IMG/VR virus record: IMGVR_UViG_3300009508_000011
Location: 1 to 64,000 of that record
Strand: one strand, 5' to 3'
Length of the DNA: 64,000 nucleotides
The notes below the pieces were generated by a model that had not been told where the DNA came from, searched no databases, and saw only the letters and a list, made by a program, of their open reading frames with translations. The position numbers were made by a program, and so were the translations under genes. Of the stretch, positions 44,028 to 62,402 are shown one piece after another (within the stretch, counting starts at the first letter, position 1; each line of letters opens with the position of its first letter).

Positions 44028-44762
44028 TTATGCAGTCCATTCATAACCAGTGGACATTAACCCATCCCACACATCTTTAGTGTATACTTTAAAGGGTCCA
44101 ATTAATTCTGTACTGTTGGACAGTATGTGCTCAATTAAATCCTCCTCTTTAATCGTATACCAACCATCTAGATAATCAACAACCTCAGAGGTGTCATTGA
44201 AAATATATGGCACATTAGAAATAGTGTGAACAAGTACTGGTTCGATATCCAGACGCCTCCATACGTTGGTTCTATCAACCATATACATATTGCGTCTAAG
44301 TTTCTTATCGAACACGCAAATCATACTTGGTTTAGGCGAGTCATCCTTACGCAAAACTCCGTGAGTATAGAATTTTAATCTACCGTGAATAAATCTAATC
44401 TGTCCCCTAAGTAAATAATTTAAGAAGACTTTGGTCGAGGTATCCACAGGAATGAATAGTACTACTGTAGCACCTTTCCTAGATTCATCCCAAGCCTTCT
44501 TAATGAACTTACCCTTATTAGCGGTATCGTTAGGTGGTGCACAGAAGACTACTTCATTGCTCCAATCTTTCACTAGTGCATCATCTTCAATGGTGTAGTA
44601 TTTATCACACTTAGCATTATCGGCACTAGCTGCTGCATCTAGAGTAAAGTTAAACTCTCTATCCAGCTGATTGAAAATGTCCTCTATGGTCCCGTTGCTG
44701 TCAGGGGTACTGGGTCCAAGATAGGTCTTGTCCACAAAGTTATTCTTAATTCTATCTGCCAT
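44028..44762 (-). CDS. Phage N6-adenine DNA methyltransferase family protein with degenerate catalytic motif
   Basis: FTLDAAAS...NAKC..YYT.EDDAL..DW and IRFIHGRLKF family motifs; motif IV reads FCAPPN instead of NPPY/F. Confidence 0.8.
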   Translation of the reverse strand: MADRIKNNFVDKTYLGPSTPDSNGTIEDIFNQLDREFNFTLDAAASADNAKCDKYYTIEDDALVKDWSNEVVFCAPPNDTANKGKFIKKAWDESRKGATVVLFIPVDTSTKVFLNYLLRGQIRFIHGRLKFYTHGVLRKDDSPKPSMICVFDKKLRRNMYMVDRTNVWRRLDIEPVLVHTISNVPYIFNDTSEVVDYLDGWYTIKEEDLIEHILSNSTELIGPFKVYTKDVWDGLMSTGYEWTA

Positions 44763-54906: not shown

Positions 54907-56334
54907 TTACCAGTTATTGTTGTTACCGCCACCGAATATCTGAATGTTACTTGCAGGTTCGGTAGTCATCCCAATAGATGAGGTGATTGAATCGATATCA
55001 ACAGCCAATGAATTAAGGTCGTTGTTAGTAGAACCTATAATAGGTGCAGTAAGACCATCAGCAAACGAAGGTATTACATACGGTACAGGAACATCGCCAT
55101 CAACGCTAATCTCAATACGTGTCTCACCAAGAATATCTACATCAACATCTATAGTAACAATGAAGTTCCAGTTATTGGTAACATCAGGCATTACGATATT
55201 AATAAGACGGTCAAGGAACAGTTGAATGTAACTGTCTAGAGGAATGTCCTCTACGAATCCACGTGGTACATCCGTGATACGTGCATCAGGTTGCCCATTT
55301 AAAGTAGCATTGGTTGCTGAGAACTTAACACGAGTAAGTAGACACTCCATAGCTAGAGGAGGTACTGTATTCGATAAGATTGTTGACATAACTGCTGTTA
55401 CATCAGAACCTTTAAAGTGCTCAGTATGTGACGTGTGTTGCGTAGCTTGCTTAAGCGCAGGCTTCAACTCAAAGTGGTTAGTTACGTGCATGGTGGATGG
55501 TGACATATCACATAATGCTCCGTAGGTAATGAAACCATCTTCGAAGTAATTGTTTTGGTCATCCCATAGACGTAGTAAACCATCATCCTGAATACTAGAC
55601 TCACGAACCTTAGTTGTTGCTTCACTATATATGTCAGACATTGTACCTGCCATATGGTCAGCATTGTTCTGAGCCGAATGAAGTGCTTTCATTGACTTAG
55701 CCAAATACTGATTGTGGTTAGTGTTAGCACGTTCAGATTTAAATGCACCACGAGCAATGTTAGCTCTGAAATCTAGTACATCCATATCTTGTTGCTGGTA
55801 ATAACTAGTAGCCTGTAGACTATTGAATACATCTTCAGGACGCATTACTACACTTTGACTTTGGAAACCTTGACCATGTATCTTAAGGTCATTAACCACG
55901 ATGTGATTAGATTCAAAAATCTGCCACTGGTTAAGACCGATTAGACGCAATACAATAACGTTGTTAATGTACATACGCATGTTAGGGTCAAGACTACCAC
56001 CCATGCCTACACCTACGTGGTCGGTATAACCAATTACGATTTTACGAACCGGTGTATTAGCTACCATCATCTCCACTTCCATGAAGAAACGGTAACGGCG
56101 TTCACCCCAACCATGACTGATGTTAATATCACGACCAGCCTCAGAAGTAGGACGTATAATAGTAGAAGCTACACCAGCTACACTGTTAGCTGAAATGTTT
56201 CTACCATCTTGCGTAGCATTCTTTAATAGTTCAATGTTACGCGTATCGTCCAAATAAGTATTGTAGGGACGAGCTGCCTGTTGGTGGTACTCGCCTGTTT
56301 CAATAAACATTAACTTAGTTACGTTAAATGACAT
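54907..56334 (-). CDS. picA: Phage-nucleus protein importer PicA/Imp1 (gp69-like)
   Basis: 475 aa between gp68- and gp70-like genes; GWGERRYRFFMEVE and MRPEDVF motifs; assigned by synteny. Confidence 0.7.
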   Translation of the reverse strand: MSFNVTKLMFIETGEYHQQAARPYNTYLDDTRNIELLKNATQDGRNISANSVAGVASTIIRPTSEAGRDINISHGWGERRYRFFMEVEMMVANTPVRKIVIGYTDHVGVGMGGSLDPNMRMYINNVIVLRLIGLNQWQIFESNHIVVNDLKIHGQGFQSQSVVMRPEDVFNSLQATSYYQQQDMDVLDFRANIARGAFKSERANTNHNQYLAKSMKALHSAQNNADHMAGTMSDIYSEATTKVRESSIQDDGLLRLWDDQNNYFEDGFITYGALCDMSPSTMHVTNHFELKPALKQATQHTSHTEHFKGSDVTAVMSTILSNTVPPLAMECLLTRVKFSATNATLNGQPDARITDVPRGFVEDIPLDSYIQLFLDRLINIVMPDVTNNWNFIVTIDVDVDILGETRIEISVDGDVPVPYVIPSFADGLTAPIIGSTNNDLNSLAVDIDSITSSIGMTTEPASNIQIFGGGNNNNW

Positions 56335-56420
56335 TTTAACTTTCCTTTTATTTAGCAATAAGATGCTTGAAGTTGTTGATTACACTACGATAATATATAC
56401 TTAAATATCGTACGGATAGA

Positions 56421-57989: not shown

Positions 57990-58020
57990 CACTAAGATAA
58001 TATATGTTTAAAATTATTTA
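57990..58020 (-). promoter_or_regulatory. Early-like promoter (TATATTATC)
   Basis: Minus strand AAATAATTTTAAACATATATTATC; near-identical copy at about 52536-52560 and a related one at about 56388-56408. Confidence 0.6.
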
Positions 58021-58509
58021 GTTGTAGTTCTCTAACCACATATTTATCGGGGTAAGACTAGCCACCGTAAATGGTTCATATTTATCACTATAGTCTCTCT
58101 CCACAGTGAAGTAATCAATCTCGGTTAAGATACCATCGAAGGTAGCACCAGAAACACCGATGGAATAATCCACATCTTCAAGTATTCCTATCCTAGGGTT
58201 ATAACCTAATACCTCACCAATTAACATCATCTCCCCTGAGTCTGCACATCTACTAATTGATAAATTATTAACGTAACAGAAGGTAAGTTCATCAGTTGGG
58301 GTAGTACGGCAATGTACACCTATAGAATCTGCACTGAAGTCCGTAATGGTAGGTTCACCTGACACTAACCTAAAGAAGCTTCTACACTTTATATTTCTAA
58401 ATAGTACATCGTAACCATTGGGGTATAGTTCTTTTTCTAGAGTAAGAAGTTTAACATACCACTTACCTAGTAAACTATGTCCTTTATTTATTGTTCTAAA
58501 ATTAGACAC
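58018..58509 (-). CDS. Accessory hypothetical protein
   Basis: 163 aa; AAGGGG RBS. Confidence 0.75.
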   Translation of the reverse strand: MSNFRTINKGHSLLGKWYVKLLTLEKELYPNGYDVLFRNIKCRSFFRLVSGEPTITDFSADSIGVHCRTTPTDELTFCYVNNLSISRCADSGEMMLIGEVLGYNPRIGILEDVDYSIGVSGATFDGILTEIDYFTVERDYSDKYEPFTVASLTPINMWLENYN

Positions 58510-58580
58510 TTCAATTCCCCTTTAAGCAAAAAAATAATGGGGACGAGAATCCCCAATATTGTTCCCTTTTTTAGAGGGTC

Positions 58581-59048
58581 TTACTTAAGATTCCAAAACA
58601 CTCTCGATTGACCGTTGGTAGAACGACGAGCTGCCTGAGCATCTTTCTTAAGTCTACCTTTACTTGGTCTATTCTTCTTATCTGCTTTAACAGCACGAGG
58701 ATTAACACAAGCTGGATAGACATCCATTTCTTTCAGGTACATGGTATCACGCCCAAACTCTTTATAAGCCTCGTTACCAATGAGACCTGTATGAAGATGT
58801 TCGAGATTACCCACCTCGTTTATAAAGAACTCACCGTGCGGTAGGAATTTACGTTCAAACTTCCCATGCCACTCACCATTAAACTCTTTATGTTTCTCAC
58901 CAGATGGGTATTCCGTAGGAGCACATGCGCTACACTTAGCGATGCCTAAATCTTCAGGCTTATTCATGGACTCCATATTTTTACAATGATACCAGCCAAG
59001 GGCTGTATTTTCACTACAGCCACATACTTGACATTGGTATATACTCAT
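58581..59048 (-). CDS. Cys-rich (CxxC x2) hypothetical phage protein
   Basis: CQVCGCSENT...CSAC...GEWHGKF. Confidence 0.75.
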   Translation of the reverse strand: MSIYQCQVCGCSENTALGWYHCKNMESMNKPEDLGIAKCSACAPTEYPSGEKHKEFNGEWHGKFERKFLPHGEFFINEVGNLEHLHTGLIGNEAYKEFGRDTMYLKEMDVYPACVNPRAVKADKKNRPSKGRLKKDAQAARRSTNGQSRVFWNLK

Positions 59049-59051
59049 TCT

Positions 59052-59741
59052 TTAAAATGGTATATCTTTATCGAATCCATCATTACCACCAGATGGAGCA
59101 GGTTTACTGTAACTATTGTTATTATTGTTGTTGCTGTAGTTGTTACCACCACCCTGACCGCCGTGTTGACCACGTGGTGCAGGTTCTTTGTAAATAGCAG
59201 TAGCAACGTTAGCAAGCAACTCACCAACATGGTTAAAGTAACCACGAGTAAATAACTTAGATTCGAAATCTTTAGGTACAGGTTGACCTTCAGCATCGGT
59301 TAAGTTATGGAAGAATGGGGACTGCATGTAGAAAATCGCTTTAGGGCGGTCTTTAGCAACCAATGAGATGTAGATACGACCATCTTCAGCTTTACCGATT
59401 ACGGTCTTGGAAATTTCTACAGGTGTATCAGAACGCTTACCGCCAGGCCATAAGTAGTTCTTGTTAGAAATGTAATAGCGACAAGGACCTGCATGGTTAA
59501 CAACTTCTTCGCTAAGTTCAAGTAATGCACGTGCTGTACGGATATCCATAGCTGCACGGATTAAACCATTATCTTTATCACCTTCAACGCCAGTATAGAC
59601 ATCGATACGTGGATTGCCATCTTCAGTAAGATAGAATAGGAAAGAAGGTGCTTGTTTAGCTCCGTCAATCTTCTCGCCATACATACGAAGTTTCTGATGG
59701 TCCAAAGCGGTTTTGGTACGCTTTTTAAATTGTTGTGACAT
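59052..59741 (-). CDS. chmC: ChmC-like nucleus-associated nucleic-acid-binding protein (gp67-like) with SSB-like C-terminal tip
   Basis: 229 aa upstream of the gp68-like gene; G/N-rich linker ending FDKDIPF; assigned by synteny. Confidence 0.65.
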   Translation of the reverse strand: MSQQFKKRTKTALDHQKLRMYGEKIDGAKQAPSFLFYLTEDGNPRIDVYTGVEGDKDNGLIRAAMDIRTARALLELSEEVVNHAGPCRYYISNKNYLWPGGKRSDTPVEISKTVIGKAEDGRIYISLVAKDRPKAIFYMQSPFFHNLTDAEGQPVPKDFESKLFTRGYFNHVGELLANVATAIYKEPAPRGQHGGQGGGNNYSNNNNNNSYSKPAPSGGNDGFDKDIPF

Positions 59742-59883: not shown

Positions 59884-60699
59884 TTATCTTGGTTTACTAC
59901 GTAACATTTCCCTAAGTAGGTCAGCTCCCAATTTATCAGTGAGCTTACTTAAGTCAGATTCAATCTTTGGTTTAGTAGTTATCGGAGACCATTTACGCTC
60001 CTTGGCCAATGTTATTAACTCAGTTTTAAGTTTACGTGGGTAGGCTGCAAAGCTTTCCCCGTCCCCAAATATCTGTAAAGTCATTGCGTTGAATGGCATA
60101 AGCTCCGTATCCTTACCAGACAGTTTACTGTTCCAGTAAGTTTTGTTTTTGACTTTGCCTGTATGCGATTCTAATAATTTACAAGATGGGAAACTATATT
60201 CTGATAATAAATCAATTGGTTGGTGTGTTAATAATAGTACGGGTCTATCTTCCCCGATTAACTTTATGTCAAAGATTTTAACCATCTCACCAAGTGCACC
60301 TACTACTTCTAATAGGGTTTCGTTGGTAAGCTGTAGTTCGTGTTTCTGCTTTGCTGTTTTATGACCTTTAGGCAATGCATGTTTGAAACACTTAGCCAAA
60401 CTTTTCTTCTCGGTGACATAATATACGACACGACGAGAATCATGACTCGCTTGTTGTATTATATCTCCAAGTAGTTGTACTTCTTCTAAGATAACAGGAG
60501 CGACATCCATAGGACTAATAGATATCTTCTCATCTGTCGACAAACAATTAAGGCAGTTACGAACTAGAGTACGTAGGTTAATCCAAATATCTCCAGACTC
60601 GCCACCTTCTTTTAAAACCACTTCCTCAATTGGGATAGCGGTAGGTACAGATACCGGGACTTGCTGTCCCAGTTCTCTGTTTAATAGTGCTGTATTCAT
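59884..60699 (-). CDS. Conserved core hypothetical protein (gp66-like)
   Basis: 271 aa; WINLRTLVRN and LLESHTG motifs; synteny. Confidence 0.7.
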   Translation of the reverse strand: MNTALLNRELGQQVPVSVPTAIPIEEVVLKEGGESGDIWINLRTLVRNCLNCLSTDEKISISPMDVAPVILEEVQLLGDIIQQASHDSRRVVYYVTEKKSLAKCFKHALPKGHKTAKQKHELQLTNETLLEVVGALGEMVKIFDIKLIGEDRPVLLLTHQPIDLLSEYSFPSCKLLESHTGKVKNKTYWNSKLSGKDTELMPFNAMTLQIFGDGESFAAYPRKLKTELITLAKERKWSPITTKPKIESDLSKLTDKLGADLLREMLRSKPR

Positions 60700-60701
60700 A
60701 A

Positions 60702-61847
60702 TTACAATACTCCGTCAAGGAGACTTAACATCTCCTGTCTCTTAGGTGCATCTATATGTTCAAGACGACCCTCAAGTAAACGTTTGACAGATTCTTTAGT
60801 AATGTCTACGGTTTGATACTTAGTGACTAATTCCATCTTAGAATCATTAACCATATCCTCAGCCGCCTCACGATTAATTGTCCACTTCATGGTTTCCCAC
60901 ATCATTTCCAATTCACGTTTAGCAGTAGCTACTTCCGAACCAGCTCTTGCAATTATTCTGACATGTGAACCACCACGTAACTTCTCAAGACGTTCCTTTA
61001 AAACATCTAATGTGTCCGCTAGTGATAAGTCCAAACAATTTACCGTAATAAACTTAGTAGCCAAGTCATTTTCAACAAAGATGATATCATTAGGGGCATC
61101 TGCGTGTATCTTAACACGGTAATGTCCCTTAGCACCCTCTTCACCATGACACAATCTATCGAACGAACCATTTACTAAAACCATGGAATCGTATTTAGAT
61201 AGCTTATGTGAGCGTTGAGTGTGATGATGACCTATGTCGATAAAGTATTCTGTTATACCTAGGTATCTATCGGAAAGGTGATGTGAAATGTTTATGTGCT
61301 GTGGTATTTGAAATTCAAACAAACCGTGCATTACACTGAAGTCAACTTTCTTTAGACCTTGGTCATGTAACAGACCTTTAACCTGCTTCCAAGTATCGTT
61401 AGGGTCATGTTCCCATTCATCTGGTACATAGAGTACATTTATATCTAAAGACTCTATATATTCGATTGAGAGGTTCTCAACCCATCTGAAATCACATCTG
61501 GATTCCAGTAGCTCATGTATCTGTGTAAACATACAACCCTGCTTCCAGTCATGAGAGGGTGTCCCCTCAAGTAGACGCAAAACGATGTTATGTTTTTCAC
61601 ATAGTTGTAAAAGGTAGCGAATGAATATCTGAATCTCACCCACACCATTAAACGATAGATACAAGTTACGGTCGAAGAAGTCCCCAGCAATAAAGATTAC
61701 ATCTAATTCAGAAGTTTCTTTGTTGTTAGGGAATGCCTTATAAAGACCTTCAACGATGTTTACAGTTGGTACTCTAGGGTGACCAACATGAATGTCAGAA
61801 ATAAAAGCAGCGTTTAATTCACCGCGTTTAAGTCTTTTAGAAATCAA
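60702..61847 (-). CDS. sbcD: SbcD/Mre11-like metallophosphoesterase nuclease (gp65-like)
   Basis: SDIHVGH, AGDFFDR, EGTPSHD, MHG, GHHH, NGSFDR. Confidence 0.88.
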   Translation of the reverse strand: MISKRLKRGELNAAFISDIHVGHPRVPTVNIVEGLYKAFPNNKETSELDVIFIAGDFFDRNLYLSFNGVGEIQIFIRYLLQLCEKHNIVLRLLEGTPSHDWKQGCMFTQIHELLESRCDFRWVENLSIEYIESLDINVLYVPDEWEHDPNDTWKQVKGLLHDQGLKKVDFSVMHGLFEFQIPQHINISHHLSDRYLGITEYFIDIGHHHTQRSHKLSKYDSMVLVNGSFDRLCHGEEGAKGHYRVKIHADAPNDIIFVENDLATKFITVNCLDLSLADTLDVLKERLEKLRGGSHVRIIARAGSEVATAKRELEMMWETMKWTINREAAEDMVNDSKMELVTKYQTVDITKESVKRLLEGRLEHIDAPKRQEMLSLLDGVL

Positions 61848-62402
61848 TTACATTTCCTCAAAATCATCTTCATCCAATTGTGGTTGTGGAGCATCAGCCT
61901 TTATCTCACCAGCGGCTTTTACATTACCTATTGGTGGATATCCGTAATATTCAAGAATGGCATTCCATTGACGTATCTCATCAATATTTACACCTTCTTT
62001 AACCACCTTACTACCAAGGTTATCTACCAAGTACTTAACACCTAAACTTGGATGTCTATCTTGGTACTGCCTGGCTTCATTGGCTATTGTATTAGCACTT
62101 ACACGTGAGTCGACGTTAATAAGCGTTGGATGACGTTTAACCAAAGGTGGAACAATAAAGATAACCTCATTGTTCTTAATCACATTAACTGATTCGTAAG
62201 CTGTGCCCGAAATATCTAACCATGGAGATAGGTCGACATTCTTTTCCGTAGATACAAACATAGGTAAGTATTTACTACGGAATTCTGATTCAGGGATAGC
62301 TCTAACTATATTATCAGTCATTTCTGAGATACTCAACATTGCATCGACTAATTCGCTAGGCATTGTCATCTCATTTGTTTCGTAATCGTCTCTATCTGAC
62401 AT
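61848..62402 (-). CDS. Conserved hypothetical protein (gp64-like)
   Basis: 184 aa; IPESEFRSKYLPMF and FIVPPL motifs. Confidence 0.7.
   Translation of the reverse strand: MSDRDDYETNEMTMPSELVDAMLSISEMTDNIVRAIPESEFRSKYLPMFVSTEKNVDLSPWLDISGTAYESVNVIKNNEVIFIVPPLVKRHPTLINVDSRVSANTIANEARQYQDRHPSLGVKYLVDNLGSKVVKEGVNIDEIRQWNAILEYYGYPPIGNVKAAGEIKADAPQPQLDEDDFEEM

What the first reader, a model, noticed from the sequence alone, without database searches (positions are those of the whole stretch)
59052..59150. ChmC-like protein carries a bacterial SSB C-terminal tip mimic
It ends GGNDGFDKDIPF after a G/N/Q linker, closely copying the architecture of E. coli SSB (linker plus DFDDDIPF). The SSB tip recruits ExoI, RecQ, PriA, RecO, Ung and RNase HI. 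A non-OB phage RNA/ssDNA-binding protein with this tip could recruit or titrate host or phage genome-maintenance enzymes, such as the neighbouring SbcD and SF2 helicase.
Basis: partly seen in the sequence, partly recalled or inferred. Interest (0 to 1): 0.6.

Follow-up and report, generated by a model that had tools for sequence, protein, structure and literature searches.

The report
SSB-like tail tip on phage ChmC
A nucleus-forming jumbo phage's abundant RNA/ssDNA-binding protein ChmC ends in a disordered linker and an acidic ...FDKDIPF tip like that of bacterial SSB. This tip is conserved across the whole ChmC family, which suggests ChmC is a protein-recruiting hub in phages that have no recognisable SSB of their own.

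Summary
Window 59052..59741 (-) encodes a 229-aa protein that ends ...SGGNDGFDKDIPF after an N/G/S-rich disordered linker.

The protein is the ChmC orthologue of a 206-kb chimallivirus. It matches PhiPA3 gp61 and sits in the conserved gene order SbcD-gp60-ChmC-gp62-PicA. ChmA is present in the genome. The AF2 model has a Whirly fold (Z 9-10 to plant Whirly ssDNA-binding tetramers), so it is not an OB fold.

The tip is not chance:
- Of 98 distinct ChmC sequences, 91 end in an acidic cluster plus a terminal F/M/W/L, and 71 have Pro within the last four residues.
- Three end in FDDDIPF, the same last seven residues as E. coli SSB.
- Within clades the tip is about as conserved as the folded domain. 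The linker is not, and its length varies.

Tip variants follow phage clades (ΦPF, DDDFPM, ΦPxF), not hosts. I therefore favour a co-evolving phage-encoded partner, plus fold-back on ChmC itself, over pure host mimicry.

No known SSB family was found in this genome. PF00436 is also absent from phiKZ, PhiPA3, Goslar, 201phi2-1 and AgentSmith.

The partner is unknown. The single complex prediction (Rhc + tail) gave no verdict. None of the ChmC and chimallivirus papers I searched for the term mentions SSB.

The parts
59052..59741 (-). chmC gene (229 aa plus stop): the chimallivirus Whirly-fold RNA/ssDNA-binding protein
   Evidence: ORF and translation. phrog_3284, E 1e-42. tblastn and BLASTP to PhiPA3 gp61, 28-30% identity, E 2e-16 pairwise. 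Collinear with the PhiPA3 gp59-gp64 block.
59175..59741 (-). Folded Whirly domain, about residues 1-189
   Evidence: AF2 model with mean pLDDT 83; residues 11-190 mostly above 90. VIA-align Z 8.7-9.9 to plant Whirly proteins (WHY2, WHY1, PBF-2, StWhy2), Z 8 to MRP1/2 and Z 7-7.5 to PUR-alpha; the next unrelated row is Z 4.8. Foldseek returns the same families at the top.
59079..59174 (-). Disordered N/G/S/Q-rich linker, residues 190-221 (RGQHGGQGGGNNYSNNNNNNSYSKPAPSGGND)
   Evidence: pLDDT below 50 for residues 193-227. Composition N 27%, G 20%, S 13%. Among relatives the length and sequence are not conserved: identity 0.21-0.31 within clades, and protein length ranges 218-274 aa.
59055..59078 (-). 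C-terminal tip GFDKDIPF (residues 222-229): aromatic, acidic cluster, Ile-Pro-Phe-COOH
   Evidence: Read directly from the sequence. 6 of 7 residues identical to E. coli SSB FDDDIPF. Right-aligned column counts in 62 tails: -1 F32/M24; -2 P48; -3 F24/I17; -4 D49; -5 D48; -6 D37/E9. Tip identity within clades is 0.55-0.87, against 0.62-0.70 for the folded domain.
60702..61847 (-).
   Evidence: phrog_100 SbcD-like, E 8e-44; weak Metallophos match. 30% identity to PhiPA3 gp59, E 9e-55.
59884..60699 (-). Context: conserved gene of unknown function immediately upstream (PhiPA3 gp60 / phiKZ gp66 homologue)
   Evidence: phrog_3229, E 4e-67. 35% identity to PhiPA3 gp60.
54907..56358 (-). Context: homologue of PhiPA3 gp63 (annotated as similar to phiKZ gp69, which is PicA/Imp1, the nuclear import factor on the shell)
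   Evidence: BLASTP E 5e-43. The PhiPA3 annotation note gives the link to phiKZ gp69. The identity of gp69 as PicA is from PMC13648698.
46764..48293 (-).
   Evidence: Weak PF00270 match, E 3e-6.

Best explanation
The gene encodes ChmC, the abundant early protein of nucleus-forming jumbo phages. [quoted passage not shown]

Its C-terminus is built like that of bacterial SSB: a disordered, low-complexity G/N/Q linker ending in a short conserved tip (aromatic, acidic cluster, Φ-Pro-Φ-COOH). I propose the tip works as SSB-type tips do.
1. It is a docking peptide that tethers partner proteins to ChmC-coated RNA/ssDNA and into ChmC condensates. There are four tips per tetramer on flexible leashes.
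2. When no partner is bound, it folds back on the basic nucleic-acid-binding face. This tunes nucleic-acid binding and condensation.

Because tip variants are fixed by phage lineage rather than by host, the main receptor is most likely phage-encoded. It would sit in or on the phage nucleus. Candidates are the shell and import proteins (ChmA, PicA) and the replication/repair set (Rhc, split DNA polymerase, helicases, UvsX, SbcD).

Shown here: sequence, fold, disorder, conservation, clade-specificity, and absence of canonical SSB genes. Inferred: that the tip binds proteins, and which ones.
For: Identity as ChmC. ChmA, the DNAP-C homologue and Rhc are present in the same genome.

Whirly fold, with plant ssDNA-binding Whirly tetramers as the best structural matches.

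Disordered linker plus tip.

Family-wide tip. Of 98 distinct ChmC sequences, 95 have at least 2 acidic residues in the last 9, 94 end in F/M/W/L, 91 have both, 84 have an aromatic at -10..-5, and 71 have Pro in the last 4. Three sequences end in FDDDIPF and five in DDDIPF.

The tip is as conserved as the folded domain, while the linker drifts and changes length. That argues for a specific contact and not only for charge.

Tip class is clade-specific on a tree of the Whirly domains: 16 changes against 54.8 in shuffles.

No SSB, gp32, Enc34-type or DUF669 family was found in this genome. PF00436 is also absent from phiKZ, PhiPA3, Goslar, 201phi2-1 and AgentSmith.

Literature:
- PhiPA3 ChmC is a homotetramer that binds ssRNA (Kd 58 nM) and ssDNA (184 nM). 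Deleting residues 204-251 abolishes condensates and nuclear-shell localisation. A Goslar ΔC mutant fails to rescue titre (PMC11077065).
- E. coli SSB condensation needs the linker and is enhanced by tip-OB contacts (PMC7584906).
- A GFP-Rhc pulldown in Goslar recovers ChmC (PMC13648698).
Against: No binding partner was identified. The single complex prediction allowed (Rhc + tail) gave no verdict and cannot be counted either way.

A published AF2 screen of phiKZ Rhc against all phiKZ proteins did not list gp67.

In Goslar, ChmC-ΔC still supports growth of the phage nucleus. The tail is therefore not essential for bulk DNA replication there, although Goslar's tip is one of the most degenerate (VAFDGLAF).

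Published ΔC mutants remove linker and tip together, so no experiment isolates the tip.

A few lineages have lost the Pro or the whole pattern: Goslar, Eowyn, 201phi2-1 and the GFGDVMAF group. My sample is rich in related metagenomic sequences, so the raw counts overstate independent conservation.
Confidence: 0.5

Rival explanations
1. Host mimicry. The tip copies the host SSB C-terminus so that ChmC, made early and in large amounts in the cytoplasm, captures or titrates host SSB-binding enzymes (ExoI, RecQ, RecJ, PriA, DnaG, RNase HI, Ung). This would either disarm them or carry useful ones to the phage nucleus.
For: FDKDIPF matches FDDDIPF at 6 of 7 positions. Three relatives are identical over 7 residues and five over 6. 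SSB tips are nearly invariant in Gram-negative hosts (PMC4137731; PMC5872125, abstract). Prophage DUF669 proteins with a DDDIPF end have been suggested to mimic SSB (PMC13687109). Chimalliviruses lack a recognisable primase and clamp (PMC13648698), so borrowing host factors is conceivable.
Against: Tips follow phage clades, not hosts. Pseudomonas phages carry ΦPxF (phiKZ FDEDMPSF, PhiPA3 FDDEIPNF) or GFGDVMAF, although PaSSB ends DDDIPF. Goslar and Eowyn differ strongly from DDDIPF, the ending shown for K. pneumoniae and E. coli SSB. A 22-member clade carries DDDFPM. An extra residue between Pro and the terminal Phe should not fit pockets that read Pro-Phe-COOH (inference from established SSB-Ct complex structures). 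Most host proteins are excluded from the phage nucleus, where ChmC acts. The host of this phage is unknown.
Confidence: 0.15
2. There is no specific partner. The acidic end is only an 'electronegative cluster' that keeps the protein soluble, suppresses non-specific RNA binding and, with the N/G-rich linker, sets condensate properties. This is the published reading of the ChmC tail.
For: PMC11077065 describes an N/G-rich region followed by an S/D/E-rich region of about 15 residues, and shows that ΔC abolishes condensates. In E. coli SSB the tip also binds the protein's own OB fold and enhances phase separation (PMC7584906). Degenerate tips in Goslar and 201phi2-1 keep the acidity and an aromatic residue but not the Pro.
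Against: Charge alone does not explain position-specific conservation of Φ at -3, Pro at -2 (48 of 62) and F/M at -1 (56 of 62), nor an aromatic about 7 residues from the end. It also does not explain exact variants being held fixed within clades whose folded domains have diverged to about 60% identity. For example, DDDFPM tip identity is 0.87 against 0.62 for the domain. Placement at the extreme C-terminus, with a free carboxylate, is typical of pocket-binding tips.
Confidence: 0.25
3. Chance resemblance: a low-complexity tail that happens to end like SSB and has no function of its own.
For: Short motifs in biased sequence can arise by chance. The linker itself is not conserved.
Against: The motif is found in 91 of 98 family members but in only one of 256 ORFs of at least 100 aa in the genome. 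It is conserved as well as the folded domain.
Confidence: 0.02

Closest known systems
ChmC of cultured chimalliviruses (PhiPA3 gp61, phiKZ gp67, Goslar gp176, 201phi2-1 gp123; Enustun et al., NAR 2024, PMC11077065)
   Same: Orthologue by sequence and synteny. Same Whirly fold and the same disordered N/G-rich C-terminal region followed by an acidic end.
   Different: The published description treats the end as an S/D/E-rich electronegative cluster and does not mention SSB (0 occurrences). In this phage and its clade the end is a near-exact SSB tip (ΦPF-COOH). The phiKZ clade has ΦPxF or GFGDVMAF, and Goslar and 201phi2-1 are degenerate.
Bacterial SSB (E. coli SSB: OB-fold tetramer + G/Q/P-rich linker + MDFDDDIPF tip)
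   Same: Tetrameric ss-nucleic-acid binder (tetramer shown for the PhiPA3 orthologue). Disordered low-complexity linker of variable length. Conserved acidic tip ending in Ile-Pro-Phe. The linker is needed for condensates.
   Different: The fold is Whirly, not OB. There is no PF00436 match. The orthologue prefers RNA about 3-fold over ssDNA and binds phage mRNAs. Tip partners are unknown. This is an analogue, not a family member.
Prophage DUF669 proteins with a DDDIPF end (PMC13687109)
   Same: A phage-borne protein outside the classical SSB family whose C-terminus resembles bacterial SSB, including the DDDIPF motif. The authors suggest SSB mimicry or host-protein recruitment.
   Different: Unrelated domain: no PF05037 match in this genome. 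Those proteins are in temperate phages replicating in the cytoplasm, not in a closed phage nucleus.
Phage SSBs with acidic C-terminal tails (T7 gp2.5, T4 gp32)
   Same: From established knowledge: an acidic C-terminal tail (in gp2.5 with a critical terminal Phe) binds the phage's own polymerase, helicase and other proteins, and competes with ssDNA for the protein's own binding cleft. This is the mechanism I favour here.
   Different: They are OB-fold proteins. No gp32 family match was found here. Their tails are not Φ-P-Φ tips.
Plant Whirly proteins (WHY1/2/3, StWhy2, PBF-2)
   Same: Best structural matches, Z 8.7-9.9. They are tetrameric non-OB ssDNA-binding proteins regarded as organelle SSBs that guard genome stability (PMC3245945).
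   Different: Only 5-13% sequence identity. The hallmark KGKAAL motif is absent from P0001 (its sequence has GKAEDG). No long G/N linker with an SSB-type tip is described for them in the text I read.

Membership tests
ChmC (chimallivirus nucleus-associated Whirly-fold RNA-binding protein) | Sequence homology to PhiPA3 gp61 / phiKZ gp67 | tested here: met
   tblastn E 6e-12 to PhiPA3 gene 061 and hits in 121 phage records, mostly chimalliviruses. Pairwise BLASTP E 2e-16 over the full length. phrog_3284, E 1e-42.
ChmC (chimallivirus nucleus-associated Whirly-fold RNA-binding protein) | Position in the conserved block SbcD-like, gp60, ChmC, gp62, gp63 (PicA), gp64, in a genome that encodes ChmA | tested here: met
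   Collinear BLASTP hits for PhiPA3 gp47, gp53 (ChmA, own genome 71140-73035), gp54, gp55, gp59-gp64. Two small extra ORFs are inserted after chmC.
ChmC (chimallivirus nucleus-associated Whirly-fold RNA-binding protein) | Whirly/PUR-type fold | tested here: met
   AF2 mean pLDDT 83. Z 8.7-9.9 to plant Whirly, 8 to MRP1/2 and 7-7.5 to PUR-alpha, with a clear gap to the next row at Z 4.8.
ChmC (chimallivirus nucleus-associated Whirly-fold RNA-binding protein) | Disordered N/G-rich C-terminal region followed by an acidic end | tested here: met
   pLDDT below 50 for residues 193-227. Composition.
ChmC (chimallivirus nucleus-associated Whirly-fold RNA-binding protein) | Basic residues of the RNA-binding face (PhiPA3 K30/K48/K59 and R35/R44/R63) | tested here: inconclusive
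   In the pairwise alignment only R44 aligns with a conserved Arg (R45 here). Other basic residues sit at shifted positions (K29, K56, R62).
ChmC (chimallivirus nucleus-associated Whirly-fold RNA-binding protein) | Homotetramer, RNA binding, condensates with RNA, nuclear-shell localisation | not testable with these tools
   Known only for PhiPA3 and Goslar orthologues (PMC11077065).
Bacterial SSB (PF00436) | OB-fold ssDNA-binding domain | tested here: not met
   No Pfam match. The fold is Whirly. So it is not a member of the SSB family.
Bacterial SSB (PF00436) | Disordered G/Q/P/N-rich linker of variable length | tested here: met
Bacterial SSB (PF00436) | Conserved C-terminal tip D-D-D-[IL]-P-F at the free C-terminus | tested here: met
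   DKDIPF here, 5 of 6 positions (6 of 7 with the upstream Phe). Exact DDDIPF in 5 relatives. Family-wide consensus.
Bacterial SSB (PF00436) | Tip binds partner proteins of DNA metabolism | tested here: inconclusive
   One complex prediction (Rhc homologue + tail 188-229) gave no verdict. No other pair could be run.
Bacterial SSB (PF00436) | Coats ssDNA at replication and repair sites | not testable with these tools
   The PhiPA3 orthologue binds ssDNA with Kd 184 nM in vitro. The in vivo substrate shown so far is mRNA.
Plant Whirly ssDNA-binding proteins | Whirly fold tetramer | tested here: met
   Fold met. The tetramer was not tested here.
Plant Whirly ssDNA-binding proteins | KGKAAL hallmark motif (PMC3245945) | tested here: not met
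   Not present in P0001. The nearest string is IGKAEDG.

The most novel reading that the evidence does not exclude
ChmC is the missing SSB-type hub of the chimallivirus nucleus. It would be a Whirly-fold tetramer that has converged on the full SSB design (tetramer, disordered linker, acidic Φ-P-Φ tip). It would coat nascent RNA, R-loop and replication-fork single strands, and use its four tips to recruit the phage's own replication, repair and shell machinery into condensates. Candidates are Rhc and the split polymerase, helicases, UvsX, SbcD, PicA and ChmA. In phages whose tip is an exact host copy, such as this one, it could also recruit host SSB-interactome enzymes. The three tip dialects (ΦPF, DDDFPM, ΦPxF) would then mark co-evolving receptor pockets that could be found by covariation.
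Probability: 0.3. Interest if true: 0.8.

Novelty: new variant of a known kind. Interest (0 to 1): 0.6.

Why it matters
Chimalliviruses replicate and transcribe DNA inside a protein shell that keeps most host proteins out. No SSB, clamp or primase has been recognised in them.

ChmC is already known to be essential, very abundant and able to bind both RNA and ssDNA. Recognising that it carries a family-wide SSB-type linker and tip gives three things:
- a concrete, testable handle on who organises single-strand transactions in the phage nucleus;
- an alternative reading of published ΔC phenotypes (loss of shell localisation and of phage yield) as loss of a docking motif rather than only of condensation;
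- an eight-residue target for mutagenesis and peptide pulldowns.

It would also be a clear case of the SSB 'tetramer + leash + tip' design arising on a non-OB fold.

Tried and rejected
The verdict was 'no answer', so it is not evidence for or against binding. SbcD-like, SF2 helicase, DNAP, ChmA, PicA and host ExoI could not be tested.
The host remains unknown. The only hint is that relatives occur in Tara and other metagenomes.
- Sequence search of solved structures found nothing, either with the whole protein or with the tail alone.
- Pfam has no family for the protein.
- Megablast of the 6-kb neighbourhood against GenBank phages found nothing.
- A chance origin of the tip was considered and rejected.
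- I considered that the tail is needed for bulk replication, as in E. coli SSB. The published Goslar ΔC result, where the nucleus still grows, argues against that strict form.
- I did not run the large representative-protein search. The word search and GenBank phages already gave 98 distinct family members.

Full report
**Observation.** The minus-strand ORF at window 59052..59741 encodes 229 residues ending ...GQHGGQGGGNNYSNNNNNNSYSKPAPSGGNDGFDKDIPF, followed by a TAA stop. The tip GFDKDIPF lies at 59055-59078. E. coli SSB, read from NC_000913.3, ends ...PSNEPPMDFDDDIPF after a G/Q/P-rich linker. The last seven residues therefore match at six positions, and the overall layout (folded domain, low-complexity linker, acidic Φ-P-F end) is the same. 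In the whole 206-kb genome this is the only one of 256 ORFs of at least 100 aa that ends in Φ-P-[FMLW] preceded by at least two acidic residues.

**What the gene is.** Pfam has no match. PHROGs gives phrog_3284, function unknown, E 1e-42. tblastn against GenBank phages hits 121 records, almost all phiKZ-like jumbo phages, including PhiPA3 gene 061 and 201phi2-1 gp123. PhiPA3 gp61 is the protein named ChmC (PMC11077065). The window belongs to an IMG/VR virus record of 206,117 bp with terminal repeats and 40% GC. A local BLASTP shows it is collinear with the PhiPA3 block: DNA polymerase, ChmA (own genome 71140-73035), nvRNAP beta, gp55, SbcD-like, gp60, ChmC, gp62, gp63 (PicA), gp64. So this is the ChmC orthologue of an uncultured chimallivirus. 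Its relatives come from metagenomes, including Tara.

**Fold.** An AF2 model built on 27 homologues has mean pLDDT 83. Residues ~11-190 are folded as a repeated beta-beta-beta-alpha unit, and residues 193-227 are below pLDDT 50. Foldseek ranks Whirly, PUR and MRP proteins first. VIA-align gives the following:
- Z 8.7-9.9 to plant Whirly proteins (WHY2, WHY1, PBF-2, StWhy2)
- Z 8 to MRP1/2
- Z 7-7.5 to PUR-alpha
- Z 4.8 for the next unrelated row

The closest solved structures are tetrameric ssDNA-binding proteins that plant biologists regard as organelle SSBs (PMC3245945).

**Is the tip conserved?** I collected ChmC sequences from four sources: two word searches of the large protein collection, 16 IMG/VR loci and 16 cultured phages. 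This gave 98 distinct sequences.
- 95 have at least two acidic residues in the last nine.
- 94 end in F/M/W/L, and 91 have both features.
- 84 have an aromatic residue at -10..-5.
- 71 have Pro in the last four.

Right-aligned columns for 62 tails read: -6 D37/E9, -5 D48, -4 D49, -3 F24/I17/L6/V5, -2 P48, -1 F32/M24. Everything upstream is G/N/Q/S. Three sequences end in FDDDIPF and five in DDDIPF, exactly as E. coli SSB does.

Within three clades, mean pairwise identity is as follows:

| Region | Mean pairwise identity |
|---|---|
| Last six residues (tip) | 0.55-0.87 |
| Folded domain | 0.62-0.70 |
| Linker | 0.21-0.31 |

The linker also varies in length; within a clade the proteins differ by 17-56 residues. 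The tip is therefore under selection comparable to the folded domain.

**Tip variants follow phage lineages.** On a quick maximum-likelihood tree of the Whirly domains, tip classes cluster strongly: 16 changes against 54.8 in shuffles. Near-copies inflate this figure.
- This phage's clade (13 rows) carries ΦPF.
- A 22-row uncultured clade carries DDDFPM-type ends.
- The phiKZ-like Pseudomonas clade (38 rows) carries F-D-[DE]-[DE]-Φ-P-x-F (phiKZ FDEDMPSF, PhiPA3 FDDEIPNF) or GFGD[VA]M.AF.
- Several deep lineages (Salmonella SA002 GFDESIPF, Erwinia Ea35-70 DFADDLPF, Burkholderia FLC9 SEDLPF) carry ΦPF.
- Goslar (VAFDGLAF), Eowyn (YDDDVWG) and 201phi2-1 (ELASFDW) are degenerate.

Klebsiella, Salmonella and P. 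aeruginosa SSBs all end DDDIPF (PMC4137731). Phages of hosts with the same SSB tip therefore carry different ChmC tips. I take this as evidence (inference) that the principal receptor co-evolves with the phage, so it is phage-encoded. Exact copies such as the one in this window could still cross-react with host SSB partners.

**Context for function.** Four SSB-type families (PF00436, gp32 PF08804, Enc34-type PF10991, DUF669 PF05037) give no match in this genome. The last three rang in no control genome, so their absence is weakly shown. PF00436 is also absent from the complete genomes of phiKZ, PhiPA3, Goslar, 201phi2-1 and Bacillus phage AgentSmith, while ringing in 10 control bacteria.

In the literature:
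- The comparative survey of jumbo phages does not name an SSB for this group (PMC7824862).
- The two 2026 preprints on the chimallivirus polymerase note the lack of a clamp and primase. One has no occurrence of SSB or 'single-stranded'.
- No paper in the library links ChmC with SSB. Both papers holding the two terms are unrelated to phages.
- PhiPA3 ChmC is a homotetramer that binds ssRNA (Kd 58 nM) and ssDNA (184 nM).
- Removing residues 204-251 abolishes condensates and nuclear-shell localisation.
- Goslar ChmC knockdown gives small nuclei with less DNA. ΔC still supports nucleus growth but not phage yield.
- GFP-Rhc pulldowns recover ChmC, along with RNA and DNA polymerase subunits.
- E. 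coli SSB is a tetramer whose linker is required for phase separation, and whose tip both recruits partners and binds its own OB fold (PMC7584906).

The parallel with SSB is therefore architectural and behavioural, on a different fold.

**Mechanism proposed.** The tip is an SSB-type docking peptide on a flexible leash, four per tetramer. It tethers partner proteins to ChmC-coated single strands and condensates. When free, it folds back on the basic nucleic-acid-binding face. The receptor is most likely a phage protein in or on the nucleus.

The published ΔC data fit either a shell-anchoring role (ChmA, PicA) or a recruitment role for enzymes needed late in infection. They argue against an absolute need for the tail in bulk replication, at least in Goslar, whose tip is degenerate.

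Rivals:
- Host SSB mimicry or titration (0.15). The clade-not-host pattern weakens it.
- A purely electrostatic, condensate-tuning 'electronegative cluster' with no partner (0.25). The position-specific Φ-P-Φ conservation weakens it.
- Chance (0.02).

**What could not be settled.** The single complex prediction allowed (Rhc homologue, own genome 161456-162940 minus strand, with the tail) returned no verdict and is not evidence either way.

**Novelty and score.** ChmC and its disordered tail are known. What is new:
- The tail ends in a family-wide, position-specific SSB-type tip, in some phages identical to bacterial SSB.
- ChmC reproduces the complete SSB design on a Whirly fold.
- This occurs in phages lacking any recognisable SSB.

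I rate it a new variant of a known kind, with interest 0.6. The strongest reading not excluded is that ChmC is the SSB-type hub of the phage nucleus. I give that a probability of about 0.3, and it would deserve about 0.8.

Noticed in passing
window 61848..62402 (-): A 184-aa protein (phrog_5171, unknown function) just upstream of the SbcD-like gene also ends in an acidic/aromatic tail...PQLDEDDFEEM. It is the only other ORF in the genome with a strongly acidic, hydrophobic-ended C-terminus.
   Followed up: no
window 58581..59048 (-) and 58018..58509 (-): Two small ORFs sit between chmC and the gp62-like nvRNAP subunit gene, where PhiPA3 has none. The first is 155 aa, has paired CxxC motifs at its N-terminus (phrog_11861) and starts 3 nt after the chmC stop. 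It is followed by a terminator-like hairpin at 58538-58555 (-), so it may be co-transcribed with chmC. The second (163 aa) matches no family.
   Followed up: partly
L007 (Erwinia phage pEa_SNUABM_54, MW879341.1 235866-237278): The ChmC gene of this phage is a tandem duplication: one 470-aa protein with two Whirly modules followed by an N/G/Q-rich tail.
   Followed up: no
window 44028..44762 (-): A Dam-type N6-adenine DNA methyltransferase (PF05869, E 3e-26) is encoded near the helicase and nvRNAP genes.
   Followed up: no
P0103: A Goslar-type ChmC cluster of 145 members is labelled in NCBI as a Salmonella enterica protein. This suggests jumbo-phage sequence inside bacterial assemblies.
   Followed up: no
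Aeromonas phage pAEv1810 (NC_070999.1; L009): This phage has a ChmC homologue ending SFDDDIDF, but this genome's ChmA found no match in it at E <= 1e-3. Either its ChmA is very divergent or ChmC occurs there without it.
   Followed up: no
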